From NCBI GenBank assembly GCA_021613535.1, contig CP075497.1, forward strand, positions 11,408,001-11,472,000: a stretch of 64,000 nt of DNA, read 5' to 3'. Source of the DNA: Adineta vaga (taxonomy: Eukaryota; Animalia; Rotifera). The notes beneath the pieces were generated by a model, which saw nothing but the letters and a program-made list of their open reading frames with translations, did not search any database and was not told the DNA's origin. Of the stretch, positions 111 to 59,381 are shown piece after piece; position 1 is the stretch's first letter, and the number at the start of each line of letters is the position of its first letter. Position numbers and translations under genes: made by a program.

Positions 111-3100
111 ATGATGATTAAGATTTTAATTTTCTTCTCGATATTTCTATTAATCTCTTCAAATCATCATTTACATTCATTACCATCCATTGAAATCGAT
201 CCAACTAATTATCCAAATTCCGATTTAATTCTCTACAACTTTCAATCATTCAAATCTCTTCGTTGTTTATTACAAACTGAATCGAAATATTTCTATCTTG
301 ATTCATCATGTCAATTATTAACACGAACATCTTTAAAACCAATCTGTCCATTAAATTATACATTAAAATTAGAATTCGTTTTTCCACATAATACAACGAT
401 CTATCAATTCACTATTCAATTGAAATATTCCAAATCATTTGATATTAATTTAACAAATGATCAATCAACAATAACATTACCATTCTATTGTAATAATAAA
501 AATCAACATGATATTCATCGAAATCAAAAGGAATTATTTGTTGGCAATGCACATTTTCTTCTAAATAAACAATCCAATAATCAACATTGTCAATTCGAAA
601 AAAATCCATATCGTATTCGATTACGAGAAAATGAATTATACAAAAATTTCCTTCAATTAAAAGCTATTTCATCATGTTTAGCAAGTCCAAATTATCTTCT
701 TGCATCATCGAATTCCAAACGAAATTTTGAATATTTTCATTTAAATTCTTCGACAGGATTTTTAAGTTTAATTCATTCCTTAGATTATGAATCGACAACA
801 ACATGGAAATTAGTTATTCAAGGTCATGATCGTTCACATATTCCATTTTACACCTATGTTATCGTTGAAGTTGAAGATATTAATGATTGTTTACCATTAC
901 TAACATGGAATTTTCCATTACAAACAATCGAAATTCTTAATGAAACCGATTCATTTAATATTCATATTGGAATCTATGAATCTAAAGTTGAACAATCCAA
1001 TATAATCATTGCAAATCTAATCGCATCAGATCTTGATGCATTACCATTTCATTTCGAATTGAAATTTAATTCTTCACATCTATTACCTTTTCAAATTCAT
1101 GGTCCATTTGCTGATTCTACATTTGTTTTATCAACTACAACAACACTCGATCGAGAATATCAAGATAAATATCTTCTACATTTAGTTTTAACTGATAATG
1201 GTCAACCAAAATTATCTTCATTCTATCAATTAACCATTTCCATCTTAGATGATAATGATAATTCACCGAAATTCGATAAACCTATTTACTATGTTGATAT
1301 ACAAGAAAATAATTTAGTTAATACAATTTTATTACAAGTACATGCAAATGATTCCGATCAAGATGATAACGGACGAGTTACATATGAATTAAATGATTAT
1401 TTCAATAATTATATTTCAATTGATAATCAAACAGGTATTATACGAACAAAAATTCAATTTGATTATGAACAAATGAAAAATTTTACATTTAATATCACTG
1501 CTATTGATCATCCGAAGAAAGGTAAACAATTGAAAACAACAGCGATGGTTTTTGTTAATATTATTGATCAAAATGATAATATCCCGAAAGTAAGTTGAAA
1601 TGATAAGACAAGGATTTTTGATCGATCAGTATTCTTCAACAATTCGATAGATGATACTCGAGGGAATAATTGAAACTAAATTAAATAGATCGTTGTTGTT
1701 TTTTCAAGAGGCAAGAAAAGAACCTTGAGATATATATCTTTTTTTTCTAGTTCCCTCAATCAACTTATGAATTCTCCATGTATGAAAACAATCCTCCTCA
1801 TAGTTATATTGGTCAAGTTATTGCTTATGATGCTGATAATTCTCCATTAACATATTCTCTCGATAATCCATCTCCTCAAATCGCTTCGCTCTTCGAAATT
1901 TCTCCTTCTGATGGCAAAATCTTTGCTCTCAATCCTCTTGATCGTGAACAATTTAATCAATATATATTCTATGTAATCGCATTCGATGGTCAACATAGAT
2001 CATCTCGAATTAAAATTCATATAAATATTCTTGATTTAAATGATGAAATTCCTCGTTTTACATTTCCCAATGATAATAATGATACATTAATTATCGATCG
2101 ATCTTATTGGCATAGCGATGATTACATTTGTCAAATTGATATACAAGATCACGATCAAATTCCTAATCATACTCTTATGCTTGTAGACAATCTAGATCGA
2201 TTGAAAAATTATGATTATCTATCAGAACAAAAATCATCCTTTCAATTCGATTCTTCGAAATTTTATCTTGATAATCATGCAAAACTTTATTTCAATTCAA
2301 CAAATGGAAGTTCATTGAATGAAGGTGTTTATTATTTAGCATTCAAAGTAAATATTTCTTGATTATATAAGACAAAAATAAATCTTTGCAATTCTCTTTA
2401 GATTATCGATGGTGATAATTATTTTGATGAGAAATTATTGAAATTAATTGTTGTTAATAATTATGAACGTGTTCAAACAATTGTTAAACTTTATGATCAT
2501 CTTGGTTCACATTTAAATAATCGTTTTTCTTATTTACAATATCGTTCGAATACTCATCAACAACAACAGACACATCATATGTATCGATCACGTCCTTCAT
2601 CATCATCATCATCCTTAGATGAATCGAATAAATTCCTTGTTTTTATTGTTATTACTGTTCTAAGTATTATTCTTATTGGTATAACATTTATATTCATTTC
2701 ATTAATACGACGAAAATCATTACAACAAAAAGAATTATTAAAAAAGCAAGATTCATTATCCACATCTTCAGCATTACAACAACAATCTGATAGTTCAACA
2801 ATAAATCTATTCAAATCACCAAATATCAATCCAAATGATAAACGACAAAGTTTACGTGTTAGTAATTGTTATGAATACAATGATATATCATCATCACCAT
2901 CTTTACTTATGTTAAATAAAGATTCCATATTACCAACATCGATTATGAATGATAATTGTTGTTTATTAGAAAAATTAAGTGAAAAAGAAATTTATGATGA
3001 ACAAAGAAATAAAGTAAATTACTTTTAAGAAAACTCTTTTTAATCGTTTATCTGTTTTCTTTTTACTTTCAGACTTATTCATCATGGGTATTATCAACAA

Positions 3101-54565: not shown

Positions 54566-56064
54566 ATGAGCAAACGTTCGACACCAGGTTAAAGTAGGAA
54601 TAGTTTCTCGCTTTGATGTACTATTGCATGCGATATCCCTTCTTTCATTTTATTCGTATCGTATCAATTTTGAATATCTTTTTTTTTCGTTTTCTATTCA
54701 TAACAGGATCTCAACAACAACGAACACCGGCCGCTTATCGTTCATCCTCTGTCGATGTTCCACGAGGTAGTTTATGAATACAAGGATTTCTATTTCTCAT
54801 CTATATTCTTTAGGTTCAACTAATCGATCATTGGTACCAGCAACCAATTCAAGAAATAATGCTTTAGAGCGAGTCGCACAAAATCCCATTCGTTTTCATG
54901 AAGAAAACGGAATGATGGTACCAGATGGTTTGTATATTTACCATCAATGCAGTAGAGTTACTAAGTACTTTTCCTAGGATATACATCACATGTAATTCGT
55001 CCAGCTGCTAGAGGCGATGTGGTAAGTCAAATTTAGGTGGGAATAATATAGGTAGGCAGTATTTGGTTTTCCATAGGTAACAATGGCTCGAGCAATGAAC
55101 CGTGATTTTGGTGCAAAAGCTAAAGCTATGTTTCAAAGTGAAGTTGATGCAGCACGTGAAGCAATTGAACAAGATCTTTATATTAGTTATCGACAACCAG
55201 GTAAAGATTTTGATTGTTATCGTGTTGGTTCAATTGGAAGATGCTTTTGTGGCCATGCACTCAATGAACATGCAAGATTTAATGGTATTGCTATAGTTCT
55301 CTTGTTCTTTCTATACTAAGATTTTGTTTGTTTTTTTGCAATAAAAAGGTAAATCAAGACGTTTAAAATGTAAATCGGGTGGCTGTGCTTGTGATGCATT
55401 TGCTTATATTCCATCTCGACCGGATGAAGCCGGCGAATTTTGGTTAGCAAAACGACCTGGTTTTGATCAATCAACTTGGCGAGCCAAATGTCGATGTGGG
55501 CATGCACATGATCGTCACGAACCCAAATATAAACGATGCAAAGGTATGTTATCTATTTATACAACAATAGTTGAACATTATCCTGTGTGTTTGTTTAGAA
55601 TGTAGTTGCAGTAATTTTAATTCGAATTTTCTATGTGCTGCATGTAACAATCATTGGGAACAACATGAAACATTTATTGAACGTGGTGATGAACGTGAAC
55701 AACAGAAATTACCCACAGGTGAATTCTATATGCCATTTGCCGAACTACCTGATATGCAACAAGTGATATTCACGGGTTCGGATGCACATATGCCAAGTCC
55801 TTATTTGGATGCAGCACCAAGACAAGCTGTTCAACATGGTGGTGGAATGCGTGGGCGTGCAGCTGCATTACGTAAATTTTAGTTTAATGCGAGAGGAAAA
55901 AAAAGAAATCTTTGTTCTCTATTATAGAAGCACCTAATCGACCAGCGATTGGCTATGAACAATATTCAAATTCATCAACACGAAATGATAATAGTGCTGC
56001 TCAGAGAGGCCCTCCACGTGGACGTGGACCGTTACGTGGAAGTCATCGAGCAACTGAAGAATAA
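54566..56064 (+). CDS. FAM221: FAM221-family protein (multi-exon)
   Basis: DCYRVG...RCFCGH, FAYIPSRPDEAGEFWL, WRAKCRCGH.H..H, FLCAAC..HWEQHET. Confidence 0.85.
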
Positions 56065-56680
56065 AGAAATCAATGATATAATATATCCGGTGCTACTTTT
56101 TCCCTGTGTAAATTTTACTTTATTTTTTATTTTGTATTGATAATCTTGCATATTCACATAATAAAGACTTTGGAAAGCAACAAATGTCATGTTTATTATT
56201 TCCCAATCGAGCGAATGGAAAAAGTATCGATGAATCATTCTTCATTCGTACGAACGAGCGAAAAAGAAAAACAACTAACCACAATCAGGATAGGGAAAAA
56301 GAAAAAAACAAACTTCTATTATACTATCGCTTGACGGATTTTACTAAAAACTTTTTTTTTATCAAAGTCTATAGAGAAGTTACAGATATGCGAAAAAACA
56401 ATAGGTAAATAGTCTTCTTGTGGGGTTTTTCCTAGTTGATGTGTCCTATATAGAAGAAAGTTATTTATGCATCATCATGTTCACTATCCGAATGCGCAAT
56501 TAATCTTACAGGTTTTTTTAAATAGGCATTCATTCTAGTGATGTAACGTTCGAGACTAGTAGCGATTTTTTAGGATGAATGACAGATGTGTGAAATTATC
56601 GGATAATTCAATGTTGAATAGATAAACAATGTTACTTTCTATTTTAGATATTTTTTCGATTTTGACTTTTCACACGAACA

Positions 56681-57166
56681 ATGAATCGAACTGAGCTCTT
56701 AAGAAGATTTCAAACTGCATGTGGATATACGTTTAAGAGAAGCGAACTATTAGAAGAAGCTCTCACACATGACAGTAATCGAGTGAATAATCGTGATGCA
56801 CCAACGTATCAACGATTGGAATTCCTTGGTGATAGTGTACTAAATTTAGTCGTTAGCGAGTATCTTTATCGCAACAATCCGAATTTTACAGAAGGTCAAT
56901 TGACAAACAAACGAAGCGAGCTCACCGATGCAACAAAACAAAGACAAATAGCTGACCAACTTGCACTGAAAGATTATATATTATTCGGGCAAAGTGTGGC
57001 GAGAGAACAATTTAGAGGACATCATAGTTTCGTTGAATCAATCATTGGAGCTGTTTATATCGATGGTGGAATGGAAGAAGCTCGAAAACTAATTCGTAAA
57101 TTTTGGGAACTTACTGATGCAGCTCCTGCTGCGGCGGCAGCTGCTGGCGCTTGTTTATTATCATAA
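56681..57166 (+). CDS. Single-domain RNase III (no dsRBD) with C-terminal CaaX, intronless
   Basis: ALTH.S, QRLEFLGDSVL, EGQL...RS.L, VESIIGAVYIDGG; ends AAPAAAAAAGACLLS. Confidence 0.9.
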   Translation: MNRTELLRRFQTACGYTFKRSELLEEALTHDSNRVNNRDAPTYQRLEFLGDSVLNLVVSEYLYRNNPNFTEGQLTNKRSELTDATKQRQIADQLALKDYILFGQSVAREQFRGHHSFVESIIGAVYIDGGMEEARKLIRKFWELTDAAPAAAAAAGACLLS

Positions 57167-57400
57167 TCGTCTAACTTGAGCAATTTCACTACTGAAATTC
57201 ATGATTAACTATATAATAGATTTTTTAAAACATATATTGCCAATAAAATCTTTCTAATGTATGAAAAATCTATTTTAGTACATGAAATTTTGCATTGAGT
57301 TTAAAAACATGATCACATATTGTCCTTATCATCTGTAATAGAATGTTCTTATTGACATTCATATCTTTCAGTAGTCCTTCATCGTCTAAATGATTTATAA

Positions 57401-58261
57401 TTAGTTTGATGTTCCATTTTTCAACACCCATCCTTCCCAAAGTTTCGTATAATGATATAAAATCTTGTGTGTTCTTTCAAATGCTTGCTGGATCTGACAG
57501 TAAATACACGATCCGTCCAGTACCAAACTAATATGTGAAGCAAATTGAATCACTCGAAAATATTGCGTTAAATTATTTAGAATTAATGCAGGTATTATTT
57601 CAAATTCACATCCTTCACAATTGATACTAATCATATCAATCATTCCATTTTTTGTTCTTGTTTGTCGAATTCTATGAATGACTTCAACAATATCAAGTAG
57701 TTCAATTTGAACAATCTTTGATGAATTCAGTGAAGATAACTTTCGAAAAGTACTTGTTCCAGCATTTCCATGATCGATGGGTTCAATCGACAGATTTCTT
57801 GCACGATTACTTAATCCATAAGGAAAAATTTCTACTTTTCGATTGGATTTAAACATATCAGAAAGATTTTTTGCCATAAAACGTAATGGTTCATAACTCA
57901 TTATCCATGGATCGTGAAATTCAATGAATTTAACAGTATCATGAGCACGATTTCCACCGACTTCAATAATGAGTGAAGAGGAATTAAATAGATGTTTATG
58001 TGCTGTATGTCTTAAACTTTCGACAGACCAGAATGATTCATCTTTACCCATACCTATACATTGGTGATACTTTTTTCTATCGATGTTTGGAAAATTTCGT
58101 GCTGGTTTACATGTGAAAGTCTCACGAATAATGATTGGCATTGAGATAGATTTTGTTGAAGAAAATGCAGAAAGTATTATATCTGATCGGAAGAAGTAAA
58201 ATAATAGAATAGATAATATTCCGCTCAATGATAAAACCAATAATTTCATTCGTGATGTCAT
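57401..58261 (-). CDS. FkbM-like SAM-dependent methyltransferase with N-terminal anchor, intronless
   Basis: IEVGGN (motif I), SYEP, FPYGLS, ISINCEGCEFEII. Confidence 0.8.
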   Translation of the reverse strand: MTSRMKLLVLSLSGILSILLFYFFRSDIILSAFSSTKSISMPIIIRETFTCKPARNFPNIDRKKYHQCIGMGKDESFWSVESLRHTAHKHLFNSSSLIIEVGGNRAHDTVKFIEFHDPWIMSYEPLRFMAKNLSDMFKSNRKVEIFPYGLSNRARNLSIEPIDHGNAGTSTFRKLSSLNSSKIVQIELLDIVEVIHRIRQTRTKNGMIDMISINCEGCEFEIIPALILNNLTQYFRVIQFASHISLVLDGSCIYCQIQQAFERTHKILYHYTKLWEGWVLKNGTSN

Positions 58262-58754
58262 TGTTGATAATAACAGTTGAGAAATGTCTAAAAAAATATC
58301 TTGAAACGTGATTAATTTTTATCGTTAGATTTTCTTGTTTCTTTTCAATTTACAAAAATTTAGCTAAACGATACATTTTTTACTTTTTTACCTGATTCTG
58401 ATTTCTGTACAATCTTTTCTCTCTCTCCGCATTTTCTTAAACGAACTAAGGATTTCAACAGAACAATAGGCAAGAATTCCTCATAATCAAAATATGTACT
58501 GCAATACAAACAGAACGAACAAATGCGTCATTTTCAGTTCATCATTGCTTATTTACTTACATTTTGTAGCAACAAGTAACCAATGAAATTATATCTTGTG
58601 AATAGATGGAAATCAATCGTCAATACAGAATACTGAATATGACGCAATATTTTTCAAATAAGTGTTAGACTTCTTCCATAGAATGATTACATGGTATTCA
58701 TAATCAATCATGATCAGATATATTCTACAAACAATTCACCGATAAATAGAAGAT

Positions 58755-59381
58755 TTATTTTTCAATACAAGCTACAGATTTAACAGATATATATTGATGT
58801 ACTTTATTCAATAATGGATCGATGGTTTTGATCTGAATAGGAATTGGTGGAGAATTCCAATCAAACCATTGAAAACCCGGATGTTCAGTTGGATTGATCT
58901 GGAAGATAAAATCATTGTCATTATGAAATAAAATGAAGAATTCGTTCCTACTTGTACTGAATCTGACTTCAGTTTTGCAAGAAATATAACAAGTGTTTTC
59001 TTTACTCGTTCACCACCAAAACGTTTGTATGTTGGATAGTAAATCTAAAGAATGTTATTATATGAAATACCGAGAAAAAATAGAGATAATTACATCTTCG
59101 AAACGGAAATTAGGATCAATGTCGATTTCAGCCGATTGAATTCCTGTTTCTTCATTCAATTCTAAATTAATTTGCACAGAATATTAAAAGAAAACGATGG
59201 TATATAAATATTTACCTCGCAAAGCTGTTTCATGTTCATTTTCTCCATTTTTCATATGTCCTTTGGGTAAATCATAGCGATATTTGTGCTTCATTAACAA
59301 AAAACTTCTATTGGATTTCATCAGAAAAAATCCACAGGATTTCACTTCTCGTAATTCTTTATCATCAAAATTTTCTGCCAT
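58755..59381 (-). CDS. Nudix hydrolase, Ap4A-hydrolase-like (4 exons)
   Basis: SCG, FLLMKH, DLPKGH..GE....TALRELNEETGI Nudix box across a splice junction; TEHPGFQW. Confidence 0.85.

What the first reader, a model, noticed from the sequence alone, without database searches (positions are those of the whole stretch)
56681..57166. Bacterial-type minimal RNase III with a eukaryotic prenylation (CaaX) tail
Seen: an intronless 161-aa protein with one RNase III domain and no dsRBD, PAZ or helicase. It ends in a GC-rich Ala linker and CLLS-stop. The signature E and D (LEFLGD) and the distal catalytic E (FVES) are intact; the position of the fourth acidic residue (E. coli D114) reads Ser and ERLEF reads QRLEF. 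Established: animals normally have only Dicer, Drosha and inactive mL44, and CaaX ending in Ser is a farnesyltransferase substrate. Inference: a horizontally acquired homodimeric dsRNase retargeted to membranes, possibly for antiviral or dsRNA defence or as an RNAi modulator. I know no description of a prenylated RNase III.
Basis: partly seen in the sequence, partly recalled or inferred. Interest (0 to 1): 0.85.

Follow-up and report, generated by a model that had tools for sequence, protein, structure and literature searches.

The report
Lipid-anchored mini RNase III of rotifers
This rotifer gene encodes a small double-stranded-RNA-cutting enzyme that has lost its usual RNA-binding domain and carries a conserved lipid-attachment tail instead. 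Undescribed relatives occur in springtails and fungus gnats, so this looks like a membrane-tethered RNase III family that has not been reported.

Summary
Window 56681-57166 (+) in the Adineta vaga chromosome-scale assembly is a 161-aa ORF with one RNase III domain, no dsRBD, and a C-terminal CLLS. It is expressed as an unspliced, polyadenylated mRNA that keeps this 3' end. It lies in conserved synteny (TCP1 / FAM221 / RNase III / FkbM-like) in Adineta, Rotaria and a further metagenome contig, and dN/dS is about 0.04-0.11.

The CaaX box is the key result. 82 of 89 family members end in C-a-a-X behind a hypervariable linker. Of the 7 exceptions, 4 start with an N-myristoylation motif and 1 ends in a transmembrane tail.

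The family is not limited to bdelloids. Springtails (Orchesella) and sciarid flies (Bradysia) have it too, with CaaX.

It is monophyletic and nested among class-1 RNase III proteins, the named ones bacterial. It is separate from Drosha and Dicer. No donor can be named.

E47, D51 and E119 are invariant. The two deviant sites (Q44, S116) match E. coli E38 and D114, where E38Q and D114G kept near-wild-type fitness.

Best reading: a farnesylated, homodimeric dsRNase tethered to endomembranes. The antiviral or dsRNA-surveillance role is inference. I found no prior description. It is a new variant of a known kind.

The parts
56681..57166 (+). CDS of the 161-aa mini RNase III (ATG to TAA), single exon
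   Evidence: dN/dS is 0.035-0.11 against A. ricciae and Rotaria orthologues.
56646..57262 (+). Minimum extent of the mRNA seen in RNA-derived contigs: 5' end at or before 56646, poly(A) addition near 57262
   Evidence: Contigs X6 (56646-57143 and 57082-57262, the latter followed by a loose poly(A) run), X15 (56651-57201), X1 and X5. No joints. Zero coverage at 56184-56615 separates it from the FAM221 transcript.
56810..56833 (+). RNase III signature motif Q44-R-L-E47-F-L-G-D51 (E. coli E38-R-L-E41-F-L-G-D45); helix alpha3, which is also the core of the predicted dimer interface
   Evidence: R45, L46, E47, F48, L49, G50, D51 invariant in 51 sequences; interface residues 44-63.
56891..56893 (+). 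E71, equivalent to E. coli E65
   Evidence: E71 conserved in at least 90% of sequences.
57026..57040 (+). S116-F-V-E119-S: S116 is at the E. coli D114 position, E119 is the E117 equivalent (invariant)
   Evidence: In the family the D114 position is S/C/N/Q, E in springtails, and D in Orchesella P0121 domain 2.
57113..57151 (+). Hypervariable, disordered linker (residues 145-157; poly-Ala in A. vaga)
   Evidence: AF2 pLDDT below 50 for residues 149-161. The linker is unconserved in alignments A1/A2.
57152..57163 (+). CaaX box C158-L-L-S161 (predicted farnesylation site), followed directly by the stop at 57164-57166
   Evidence: 82 of 89 family members. Strain or haplotype variants at codons 158 and 161 are synonymous.
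57242..57247 (+). AATAAA polyadenylation signal, about 15 nt before the observed poly(A) site

Best explanation
The gene encodes a class-1-type (bacterial-type) RNase III catalytic domain that has lost its dsRBD. In its place it has a flexible linker ending in a CaaX box (CLLS). The likely sequence of events is as follows. The protein folds as a canonical RIIID and forms the usual symmetric homodimer, which creates the catalytic valley. Farnesyltransferase modifies Cys158 (X = Ser). Rce1 removes -LLS and ICMT methylates the new C-terminus at the ER. With no polybasic stretch or palmitoylatable Cys as a second signal, the dimer then stays on the cytosolic face of endomembranes, held by two lipid anchors. 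There it cleaves double-stranded RNA using the invariant E47/D51/E119 site, with S116 in place of the fourth carboxylate. Membrane tethering, and perhaps a partner protein, would replace the dsRBD as the means of concentrating the enzyme on substrate.

Shown here: the gene, its expression, the fold, purifying selection, the conserved lipid-anchor signals, and the encoded machinery. Inferred: actual prenylation, catalytic activity, and location. The most likely biological role is destruction or processing of membrane-associated dsRNA, for example replication intermediates of RNA viruses or RdRP products. This parallels prenylated OAS1-p46 in mammals, and it is inference only.
For: Gene and expression: an unspliced poly(A) mRNA appears in RNA contigs of 4 studies and keeps the stop and CaaX.

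Selection: dN/dS is 0.035-0.11, with dS saturated. Synteny TCP1/FAM221/RNase III/FkbM-like is conserved in A. ricciae, Rotaria and L012.

Fold: AF2 pLDDT is 89.7. The best PDB matches are bacterial RNase III (E. coli 7r97, TMq 0.81, rmsd 1.6).

Dimer: ipSAE is 0.89 against a best control of 0.60, with at least 96% contact agreement and partner pLDDT of at least 88. That mark was reached by 21 of 30 proteins solved as pairs of one chain and 0 of 23 solved as single chains. The interface is residues 44-63 and 69-75, the canonical one. The pass may reflect memory of solved RNase III dimers.

Active site: E47, D51 and E119 are invariant in 51 sequences. In the E. coli rnc deep mutational scan, E41, D45 and E117 tolerate no change. 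D114 is tolerant: D114G has fitness 0.99 and 48% cleavage against 69% for wild type. E38Q has fitness 0.99 and 47% cleavage (PMC10037077).

Lipid anchor: 82 of 89 members have C-a-a-X with a2 = I/L/V/M and X = S (55), M (11), L (7), A (6), C (2), V (1). Of the 7 without CaaX, 4 begin MGNS.. (N-myristoylation consensus) and P0182 ends in a transmembrane segment (KD 2.96). The A. vaga C5 paralogue has both MGNAEAK- and -CTIS. Orchesella P0121 ends in a tail-anchor-like segment (KD 1.68). The tail, residues 149-161, is predicted disordered.

Machinery: prenyltransferase beta (PF00432), ICMT and Rce1-like genes are present in the genome.

Precedent for CaaX-directed dsRNA surveillance at membranes: OAS1-p46 (PMC13315676).
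Against: There is no biochemical evidence for prenylation, localisation or cleavage.

S116 replaces one of the four metal-binding carboxylates in most members.

E. coli RNase III without its dsRBD cleaved only 2% in the same study, so a dsRBD-less enzyme may be weak, may need a cofactor (as Mini-III needs L3; PMC8708148), or may mainly bind RNA.

The RIIID is only slightly less acidic than bacterial RIIIDs (median net charge 0 against -3), so there is no obvious compensating RNA-binding surface.

The endomembrane location rests only on the absence of a second targeting signal.

The substrate and the biological role are unknown.
Confidence: 0.6

Rival explanations
1. Lipid-anchored but catalytically dead or very weak. 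On this reading it is a membrane-tethered dsRNA-binding or scaffolding pseudo-enzyme. It might sequester dsRNA, or poison or regulate other RNase III enzymes by heterodimerisation.
For: The D114 equivalent is Ser, Cys, Asn or Gln in most members, and the E38 equivalent is Gln. There is no dsRBD. E. coli delta-dsRBD is nearly inactive in the reported assay. Catalytically inactive RNase III that still binds dsRNA is known (rnc70; PMC8708148).
Against: E47, D51 and E119 are invariant across 51 sequences and about 40% sequence divergence, which is unexpected for a pseudo-enzyme. The two deviant positions are sites where E38Q and D114G kept near-wild-type fitness in E. coli. Springtail members keep all the acidic residues.
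Confidence: 0.2
2. An active, soluble RNA-processing enzyme (a Mini-III-like rRNA or ncRNA maturase) whose C-terminal Cys motif is not prenylated or has another use.
For: Domain-only RNase III enzymes that process rRNA exist: Mini-III and plant RTL4 among the structural matches.
Against: A Cys exactly at -4 with an aliphatic a2 in 82 of 89 members, behind a hypervariable linker, is the signature of a CaaX substrate. CaaX is replaced by N-myristoylation motifs or a transmembrane tail in the exceptions. No Mini-III chain appears among PDB sequence hits at E <= 1e-5, whereas canonical RNase III reaches 7.9e-19. NCBIfam matches only TIGR02191.
Confidence: 0.1
3. A truncated fragment or retrocopy of the host's own Drosha (RIIIDb) or Dicer, rather than a class-1 enzyme.
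For: Human Drosha RIIIDb also reads QRMEFLGD and aligns over residues 7-134 (56 bits). Whole-protein scores of Drosha-like proteins top the representatives search because two domains add up.
Against: Per-domain scores are 120-136 bits for class-1 (bacterial-length) proteins and at most 110 for Drosha-like domains. In the careful tree the family (100/99*) sits among class-1 proteins, while the Drosha A/B and PAZ-bearing clades lie elsewhere. The AU test of 'family + Drosha/Dicer as one clade' gives p = 0.024, though that group was named after seeing the tree. A. vaga's own Dicer/Drosha-like RIIIDs match at only 31-44 bits.
Confidence: 0.05
4. Assembly contaminant or chimera, not a rotifer gene.
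For: Bacterial-type sequence with no intron.
Against: It lies on a 13.9-Mb chromosome-scale contig between the intron-bearing TCP1 and FAM221 genes. The same gene order occurs in 4 other bdelloid assemblies or contigs. The mRNA is polyadenylated with an AATAAA signal. It carries a eukaryote-specific CaaX.
Confidence: 0.01

Closest known systems
Bacterial class-1 RNase III (Rnc; TIGR02191; e.g. E. coli 7r97, M. tuberculosis 2a11)
   Same: It has the same RIIID fold (TMq 0.81, rmsd 1.6). The N-terminus starts at the same helix. It shares the signature helix, the E41/D45/E117 equivalents and the predicted homodimer interface. This is the closest sequence relative outside the family (35-45% identity).
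   Different: No dsRBD. The D114 equivalent is Ser and the E38 equivalent is Gln. It has a eukaryotic CaaX tail and is encoded in animal genomes.
Mini-III (MrnC) of Bacillus and chloroplasts, and plant RTL4
   Same: A single RIIID without a dsRBD, of about 140-160 aa.
   Different: It is not a close sequence relative: there is no Mini-III hit at E <= 1e-5 in the PDB search. Mini-III is a soluble rRNA maturase that depends on ribosomal protein L3. No lipid-anchor signal is known to me for Mini-III or RTL4 (own knowledge, not tested here).
Prenylated OAS1-p46 (human dsRNA sensor)
   Same: A dsRNA-acting protein whose C-terminal CaaX anchors it to the cytosolic face of endomembranes. [quoted passage not shown] It is a functional analogy for why a dsRNA enzyme would be prenylated.
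   Different: The fold and chemistry are unrelated (a nucleotidyltransferase making 2-5A, not a nuclease). It is a vertebrate protein.
Bacterial-derived class-1 RNase III genes of arbuscular mycorrhizal fungi
   Same: A precedent for a bacterial RNase III gene acquired and expressed by a eukaryote (PMC5982333).
   Different: No lipid-anchor motif is described for them in that paper, and I did not examine their domain content or tails here. They belong to a different host lineage.
Drosha RIIIDb and Dicer RIIIDs
   Same: The same domain superfamily. Drosha RIIIDb shares the Q at the E38 position.
   Different: They form separate clades, are multidomain proteins that work as intramolecular pseudo-dimers, and have no CaaX.

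Membership tests
RNase III catalytic domain (PF00636 / PF14622) | Significant match to the domain models above the gathering score | tested here: met
   PF14622 97.9 bits (cut-off 35); PF00636 73.9 bits (cut-off 27). AF2 model matches bacterial RNase III structures.
RNase III catalytic domain (PF00636 / PF14622) | Signature motif ERLEFLGD with E41 and D45 equivalents | tested here: met
   QRLEFLGD. E47 and D51 are invariant in 51 family sequences. E38 is replaced by Q.
RNase III catalytic domain (PF00636 / PF14622) | All four metal-binding carboxylates (E41, D45, D114, E117) | tested here: not met
   Three of four are present. The D114 equivalent is S116. D114 is the one site that tolerates mutation in E. 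coli.
Bacterial-type class-1 RNase III (TIGR02191 equivalog) | RIIID followed by one dsRBD; score above the equivalog cut-off | tested here: not met
   132.4 bits against a cut-off of 166.25. Only model positions 1-138 of 219 match. No PF00035 hit.
Bacterial-type class-1 RNase III (TIGR02191 equivalog) | Phylogenetic placement among class-1 sequences rather than Drosha or Dicer | tested here: met
   In the careful tree the family (100/99*) is nested among class-1 proteins, and a set of 36 rows with 5 class-1 proteins has 97/93* support. AU p = 0.024 against a union with Drosha/Dicer.
RNase III homodimer | Symmetric dimer through the signature helix | tested here: inconclusive
   Predicted: ipSAE 0.89 against a best control of 0.60, interface 44-63 and 69-75. 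This is a model-based pass that may come from memory of solved dimers. It is not a measurement.
Mini-III (MrnC) | Sequence membership in the Mini-III lineage | tested here: not met
   No Mini-III chain among PDB hits at E <= 1e-5, while canonical RNase III reaches 7.9e-19. NCBIfam returns only TIGR02191.
CaaX prenylation substrates | Cys exactly four residues from the C-terminus, aliphatic a2, X that specifies a prenyltransferase | tested here: met
   C158-L-L-S161-stop. By the established rule X = Ser indicates farnesyltransferase. 82 of 89 relatives keep the motif.
CaaX prenylation substrates | Accessible, flexible C-terminal segment | tested here: met
   pLDDT below 50 for residues 149-161. 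The linker is hypervariable.
CaaX prenylation substrates | Host encodes prenyltransferase beta subunits, a CaaX protease and ICMT | tested here: met
   PF00432 hits of 347, 324 and 173 bits. ICMT at 75 bits. Rce1-like at 49 bits in G000.
CaaX prenylation substrates | Covalent prenyl group on the Cys; membrane association dependent on it | not testable with these tools
   Needs labelling or mass spectrometry, and localisation of wild type against C158S.

The most novel reading that the evidence does not exclude
A previously unrecognised class of RNase III. It consists of lipid-anchored (CaaX, N-myristoyl or tail-anchored), dsRBD-less homodimeric dsRNases, and is shared by three unrelated soil-invertebrate lineages: bdelloid rotifers, springtails and sciarid flies. 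On this reading it derives from one bacterial-type gene that spread between animals by horizontal transfer. It would act as a membrane-localised innate defence that destroys dsRNA at viral replication membranes, or that gates RdRP-driven RNAi amplification.
Probability: 0.3. Interest if true: 0.88.

Novelty: new variant of a known kind. Interest (0 to 1): 0.74.

Why it matters
RNase III enzymes are central to RNA processing and RNAi, and their classes are defined by what is attached to the catalytic domain. Here the dsRBD has been replaced by membrane-anchor signals in at least three forms, which are kept under selection in rotifers, springtails and fungus gnats. That would add a new architecture and a new cellular location (membrane surfaces) to the family.

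It would parallel the recent finding that prenylation aims the human dsRNA sensor OAS1 at viral replication organelles.

It also gives a clean, testable case of a bacterial-type gene domesticated by adding a eukaryotic targeting signal. Its patchy distribution across animals raises the question of gene transfer among soil invertebrates.

It may matter for how dsRNA, including RNAi-based pest control agents aimed at sciarid pests, is handled in these animals. That last point is speculation.

Tried and rejected
1. Drosha or Dicer fragment: rejected by per-domain scores, the tree and the AU test.

2. Viral source: a scan of IMG/VR found only relatives at 28-38% identity, no closer than bacteria.

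3. A specific bacterial donor: the best genome hits are 35-43% identical and scattered over Atribacterota, Actinomycetota, Bacillota, Verrucomicrobiota, Fibrobacterota and others. No donor can be named.

4. Mini-III membership: rejected.

5. Trans-spliced leader: the 15 loose letters before 56646 in run X6 begin with the same 10 letters as the loose end at 57082, inside the CDS. I read them as adaptor sequence, not a leader.

6. Fusion with FAM221: no RNA contig bridges 56184-56615, so these are separate transcripts.

7. Host of P0060/P0061. The neighbouring 516-aa ORF has no match in A. vaga and gives only weak arthropod-type Env/F-protein leads in the Atlas. The later search placed these proteins with Orchesella springtails.

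8. Orchesella P0121 domain 2 groups with bdelloid clade A, but on a 1.8-long branch, so its placement is not trusted.

9. A compensating basic RNA-binding surface: only a slight shift in net charge.

10. The search of earlier findings returned nothing that bears on this locus.

Full report
**What is there**

The window is G000:C6:11408001-11472000 of a 100.8-Mb, six-contig genome. A paralogue on the same 13.9-Mb contig is named I4U23_027550 [Adineta vaga], so this is the chromosome-level A. vaga assembly.

At 56681-57166 (+) there is a 161-aa ORF running from ATG to TAA. Pfam finds one RNase III domain: PF14622 at 6.5e-28 and PF00636 at 2e-20, over residues 21-140. NCBIfam's RNase III equivalog TIGR02191 matches only its positions 1-138 of 219 and stays below its cut-off (132 bits against 166). 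That is what a canonical RNase III lacking its dsRBD should give. The protein ends in ...AAPAAAAAAGA-CLLS-stop.

**It is a real, expressed, single-exon gene with this C-terminus**

Logan contigs from four runs of four studies were laid on 54600-58900. The runs are RNA-derived. They carry six GT..AG joints of 47-64 nt in the upstream FAM221 gene, and one contig ends in a poly(A) run.

The RNase III gene is covered from 56646/56651 to 57201/57262 with no joint. The poly(A) run follows 57262, about 15 nt after an AATAAA at 57242. No contig covers 56184-56615, so the gene is transcribed separately from FAM221. The refutation condition 'splices to a different 3' end' is therefore not met.

Strain or haplotype differences at the Cys158 and Ser161 codons are synonymous.

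**It is an old resident of bdelloid genomes under purifying selection**

The gene order TCP1(-) / FAM221(+) / RNase III(+) / FkbM-like ORF(-) is found in several places:
- the window itself;
- A. ricciae, where the RNase III gene is tandemly duplicated;
- two Rotaria assemblies, where TCP1, the RNase III gene and the downstream ORF were called;
- a 1.5-Mb metagenome contig whose orthologue is 57% identical.

Nei-Gojobori dN/dS is 0.035-0.064 against A. ricciae and 0.11 against Rotaria, with synonymous sites saturated. Contamination or chimerism is excluded.

**The CaaX tail**

Among 89 family sequences collected here, 82 have Cys at -4 with a2 = I, L, V or M. The X residue is S (55), M (11), L (7), A (6), C (2) or V (1). 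The 12-17 residues before the Cys are hypervariable and are predicted disordered (pLDDT below 50 for residues 149-161). This is the arrangement seen in Ras- and Rho-type CaaX proteins.

The exceptions are informative:
- Four of the seven begin MGNS.., which fits the N-myristoylation consensus.
- P0182 ends in a 19-residue hydrophobic segment (KD 2.96).
- The A. vaga paralogue on C5 (L002 1474-1971, 165 aa) carries both MGNAEAK- and -CTIS.
- The 1390-aa Orchesella protein P0121, with tandem family-type domains, ends in a tail-anchor-like segment.

So the family keeps a membrane anchor, but the kind of anchor varies. That is hard to explain unless membrane attachment itself is the selected property.

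The genome encodes prenyltransferase beta subunits, ICMT and an Rce1-like protease. X = Ser predicts farnesylation by the established rule. There is no nearby polybasic stretch or second Cys. By analogy with other farnesyl-only proteins, this points to endomembranes rather than the plasma membrane. That last step is inference.

**Is it an enzyme?**

The AF2 model (pLDDT 89.7) superposes best on bacterial RNase III: E. coli 7r97 at TMq 0.81 and rmsd 1.6, then the C. jejuni, T. maritima and M. tuberculosis structures.

A two-copy prediction passes the tool's mark:
- ipSAE 0.89 against a best control of 0.60;
- at least 96% contact agreement between runs, and partner pLDDT of at least 88;
- the mark was reached by 21 of 30 proteins solved as pairs of one chain and 0 of 23 solved as single chains.

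The interface is residues 44-63 and 69-75, which is the canonical signature-helix dimer. Because RNase III dimers are solved, this shows likeness and not binding.

E47, D51 and E119 (E. coli E41, D45, E117) are invariant in 51 sequences. In the deep mutational scan of E. coli rnc, E41, D45 and E117 tolerate no substitution and D114 is the tolerant exception. D114G has fitness 0.99 and 48% cleavage against 69% for wild type. E38Q has fitness 0.99 and 47% cleavage (PMC10037077). Springtail members still have E at both positions.

I therefore favour an active nuclease. The main caveat comes from the same study: E. coli RNase III without its dsRBD cleaved only 2%. A dsRBD-less enzyme probably needs another way of engaging substrate. 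Mini-III uses ribosomal protein L3 (PMC8708148). Here, two-point tethering on a membrane or an unknown partner are the candidates.

**Where the family occurs**

The family is in every bdelloid group sampled: Adineta, Rotaria and Didymodactylos. A. vaga has three loci.

It also occurs outside rotifers:
- Bradysia odoriphaga has a single-exon gene on a 1.2-Mb contig next to Cdc6- and EF-hand genes.
- B. coprophila and several related Logan sequences have it, all ending C-x-x-M.
- Orchesella cincta, O. dallaii and related sequences have it, ending CVIA, CLII, CAIF and similar.

**Origin**

In a careful ML tree of 88 domains the family is monophyletic (100/99*). It is nested among class-1 RIIID+dsRBD proteins, of which the named ones are bacterial MAGs. 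Drosha RIIIDa, Drosha RIIIDb and PAZ-bearing proteins form their own clades elsewhere. Holding the family together with Drosha and Dicer costs 20.6 lnL units (AU p = 0.024; the group was named after seeing the tree).

Per-domain profile scores are 120-136 bits for class-1 (bacterial-length) proteins and at most 110 for Drosha-like domains. A. vaga's own Dicer/Drosha RIIIDs reach only 31-44 bits.

The best bacterial genome hits are 35-43% identical and come from many phyla. Viral contigs are no closer, at 28-38%.

Within the family, Sciaridae (100/99*) group with the springtail clade (94/86). The finding's orthologues form a bdelloid clade (96/98*), and the base of the family is unresolved.

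Taken together, a class-1, bacterial-type ancestry is well supported, and acquisition by horizontal transfer is the simplest reading. The donor, the date and the number of transfers are open. Animal-to-animal transfer, an unsampled eukaryotic reservoir, and an ancient gene with massive loss all remain possible.

**Function**

No paper in the searched library describes a prenylated or membrane-anchored RNase III, or this family in bdelloids, springtails or sciarids. The bdelloid RNAi survey counted only PAZ-plus-Dicer-domain proteins, so it would have missed this family (PMC7943196).

The nearest functional precedent is human OAS1-p46. [quoted passage not shown]

By analogy, I propose a membrane-resident dsRNase that clears or processes dsRNA at such sites. 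An alternative is that it limits RdRP-made dsRNA in animals with greatly expanded RdRP and Argonaute families. This step is inference only.

**Verdict**

It is a new variant of a known kind: an RNase III with lipid anchors in place of the dsRBD. Interest is high because the anchor signals are strongly conserved, the distribution is unexpected, and the decisive experiments are simple.

Noticed in passing
window 57401-58261 (-): Intronless 286-aa ORF with an N-terminal hydrophobic segment, and a conserved neighbour of the RNase III gene in all the bdelloid loci seen (50% identity to L012:6643-7551). Pfam gives only sub-threshold FkbM methyltransferase hits: E 0.16 here and about 1e-3 in the orthologues. 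It is covered by RNA contigs. It may be another acquired gene.
   Followed up: partly
L002 1474-1971 (-) = G000:C5:16427147-16427644 (-): Paralogue of 165 aa with both an N-myristoylation-type start (MGNAEAK) and a CaaX end (CTIS), so dual lipid-anchor signals. The public model I4U23_027209 (413 aa, P0198) fuses it with neighbouring ORFs and loses both termini. That is probably a mis-annotation.
   Followed up: partly
L003 about 1490-1880 (-) = G000:C6:948230-948620: A third A. vaga copy, ending CVIS, lacks the N-terminal helix of the domain in the open frame. The annotated N-terminus (P0059) is unrelated sequence. It may have an intron or be truncated.
   Followed up: no
L016 3036-3527 and 4001-4489 (+): A. 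ricciae carries a tandem duplication of the orthologue (P0004 and P0002), with dS 0.22 and dN/dS 0.33 between the copies.
   Followed up: partly
P0121 (Orchesella dallaii, 1390 aa): A springtail protein with several tandem family-type RNase III domains, of which only the second keeps the catalytic motifs. These are followed by a long low-complexity region and a C-terminal tail-anchor-like hydrophobic segment. It may be a real multi-domain derivative or a fused gene model.
   Followed up: partly
window 54709-56108 (+): FAM221-like gene with six 47-64-nt GT..AG introns confirmed by RNA contigs. Its transcript ends near 56108, separately from the RNase III mRNA. Only one exon (55598-55870) was searched, by reference, and the exons were not joined.
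   Followed up: partly
window 56646 and 57082 (run X6): Two RNA contigs of one 2013 run begin with the same non-genomic letters (ACGACACGTA...). I read these as adaptor and not a spliced leader. Whether this mRNA is trans-spliced remains untested.
   Followed up: no
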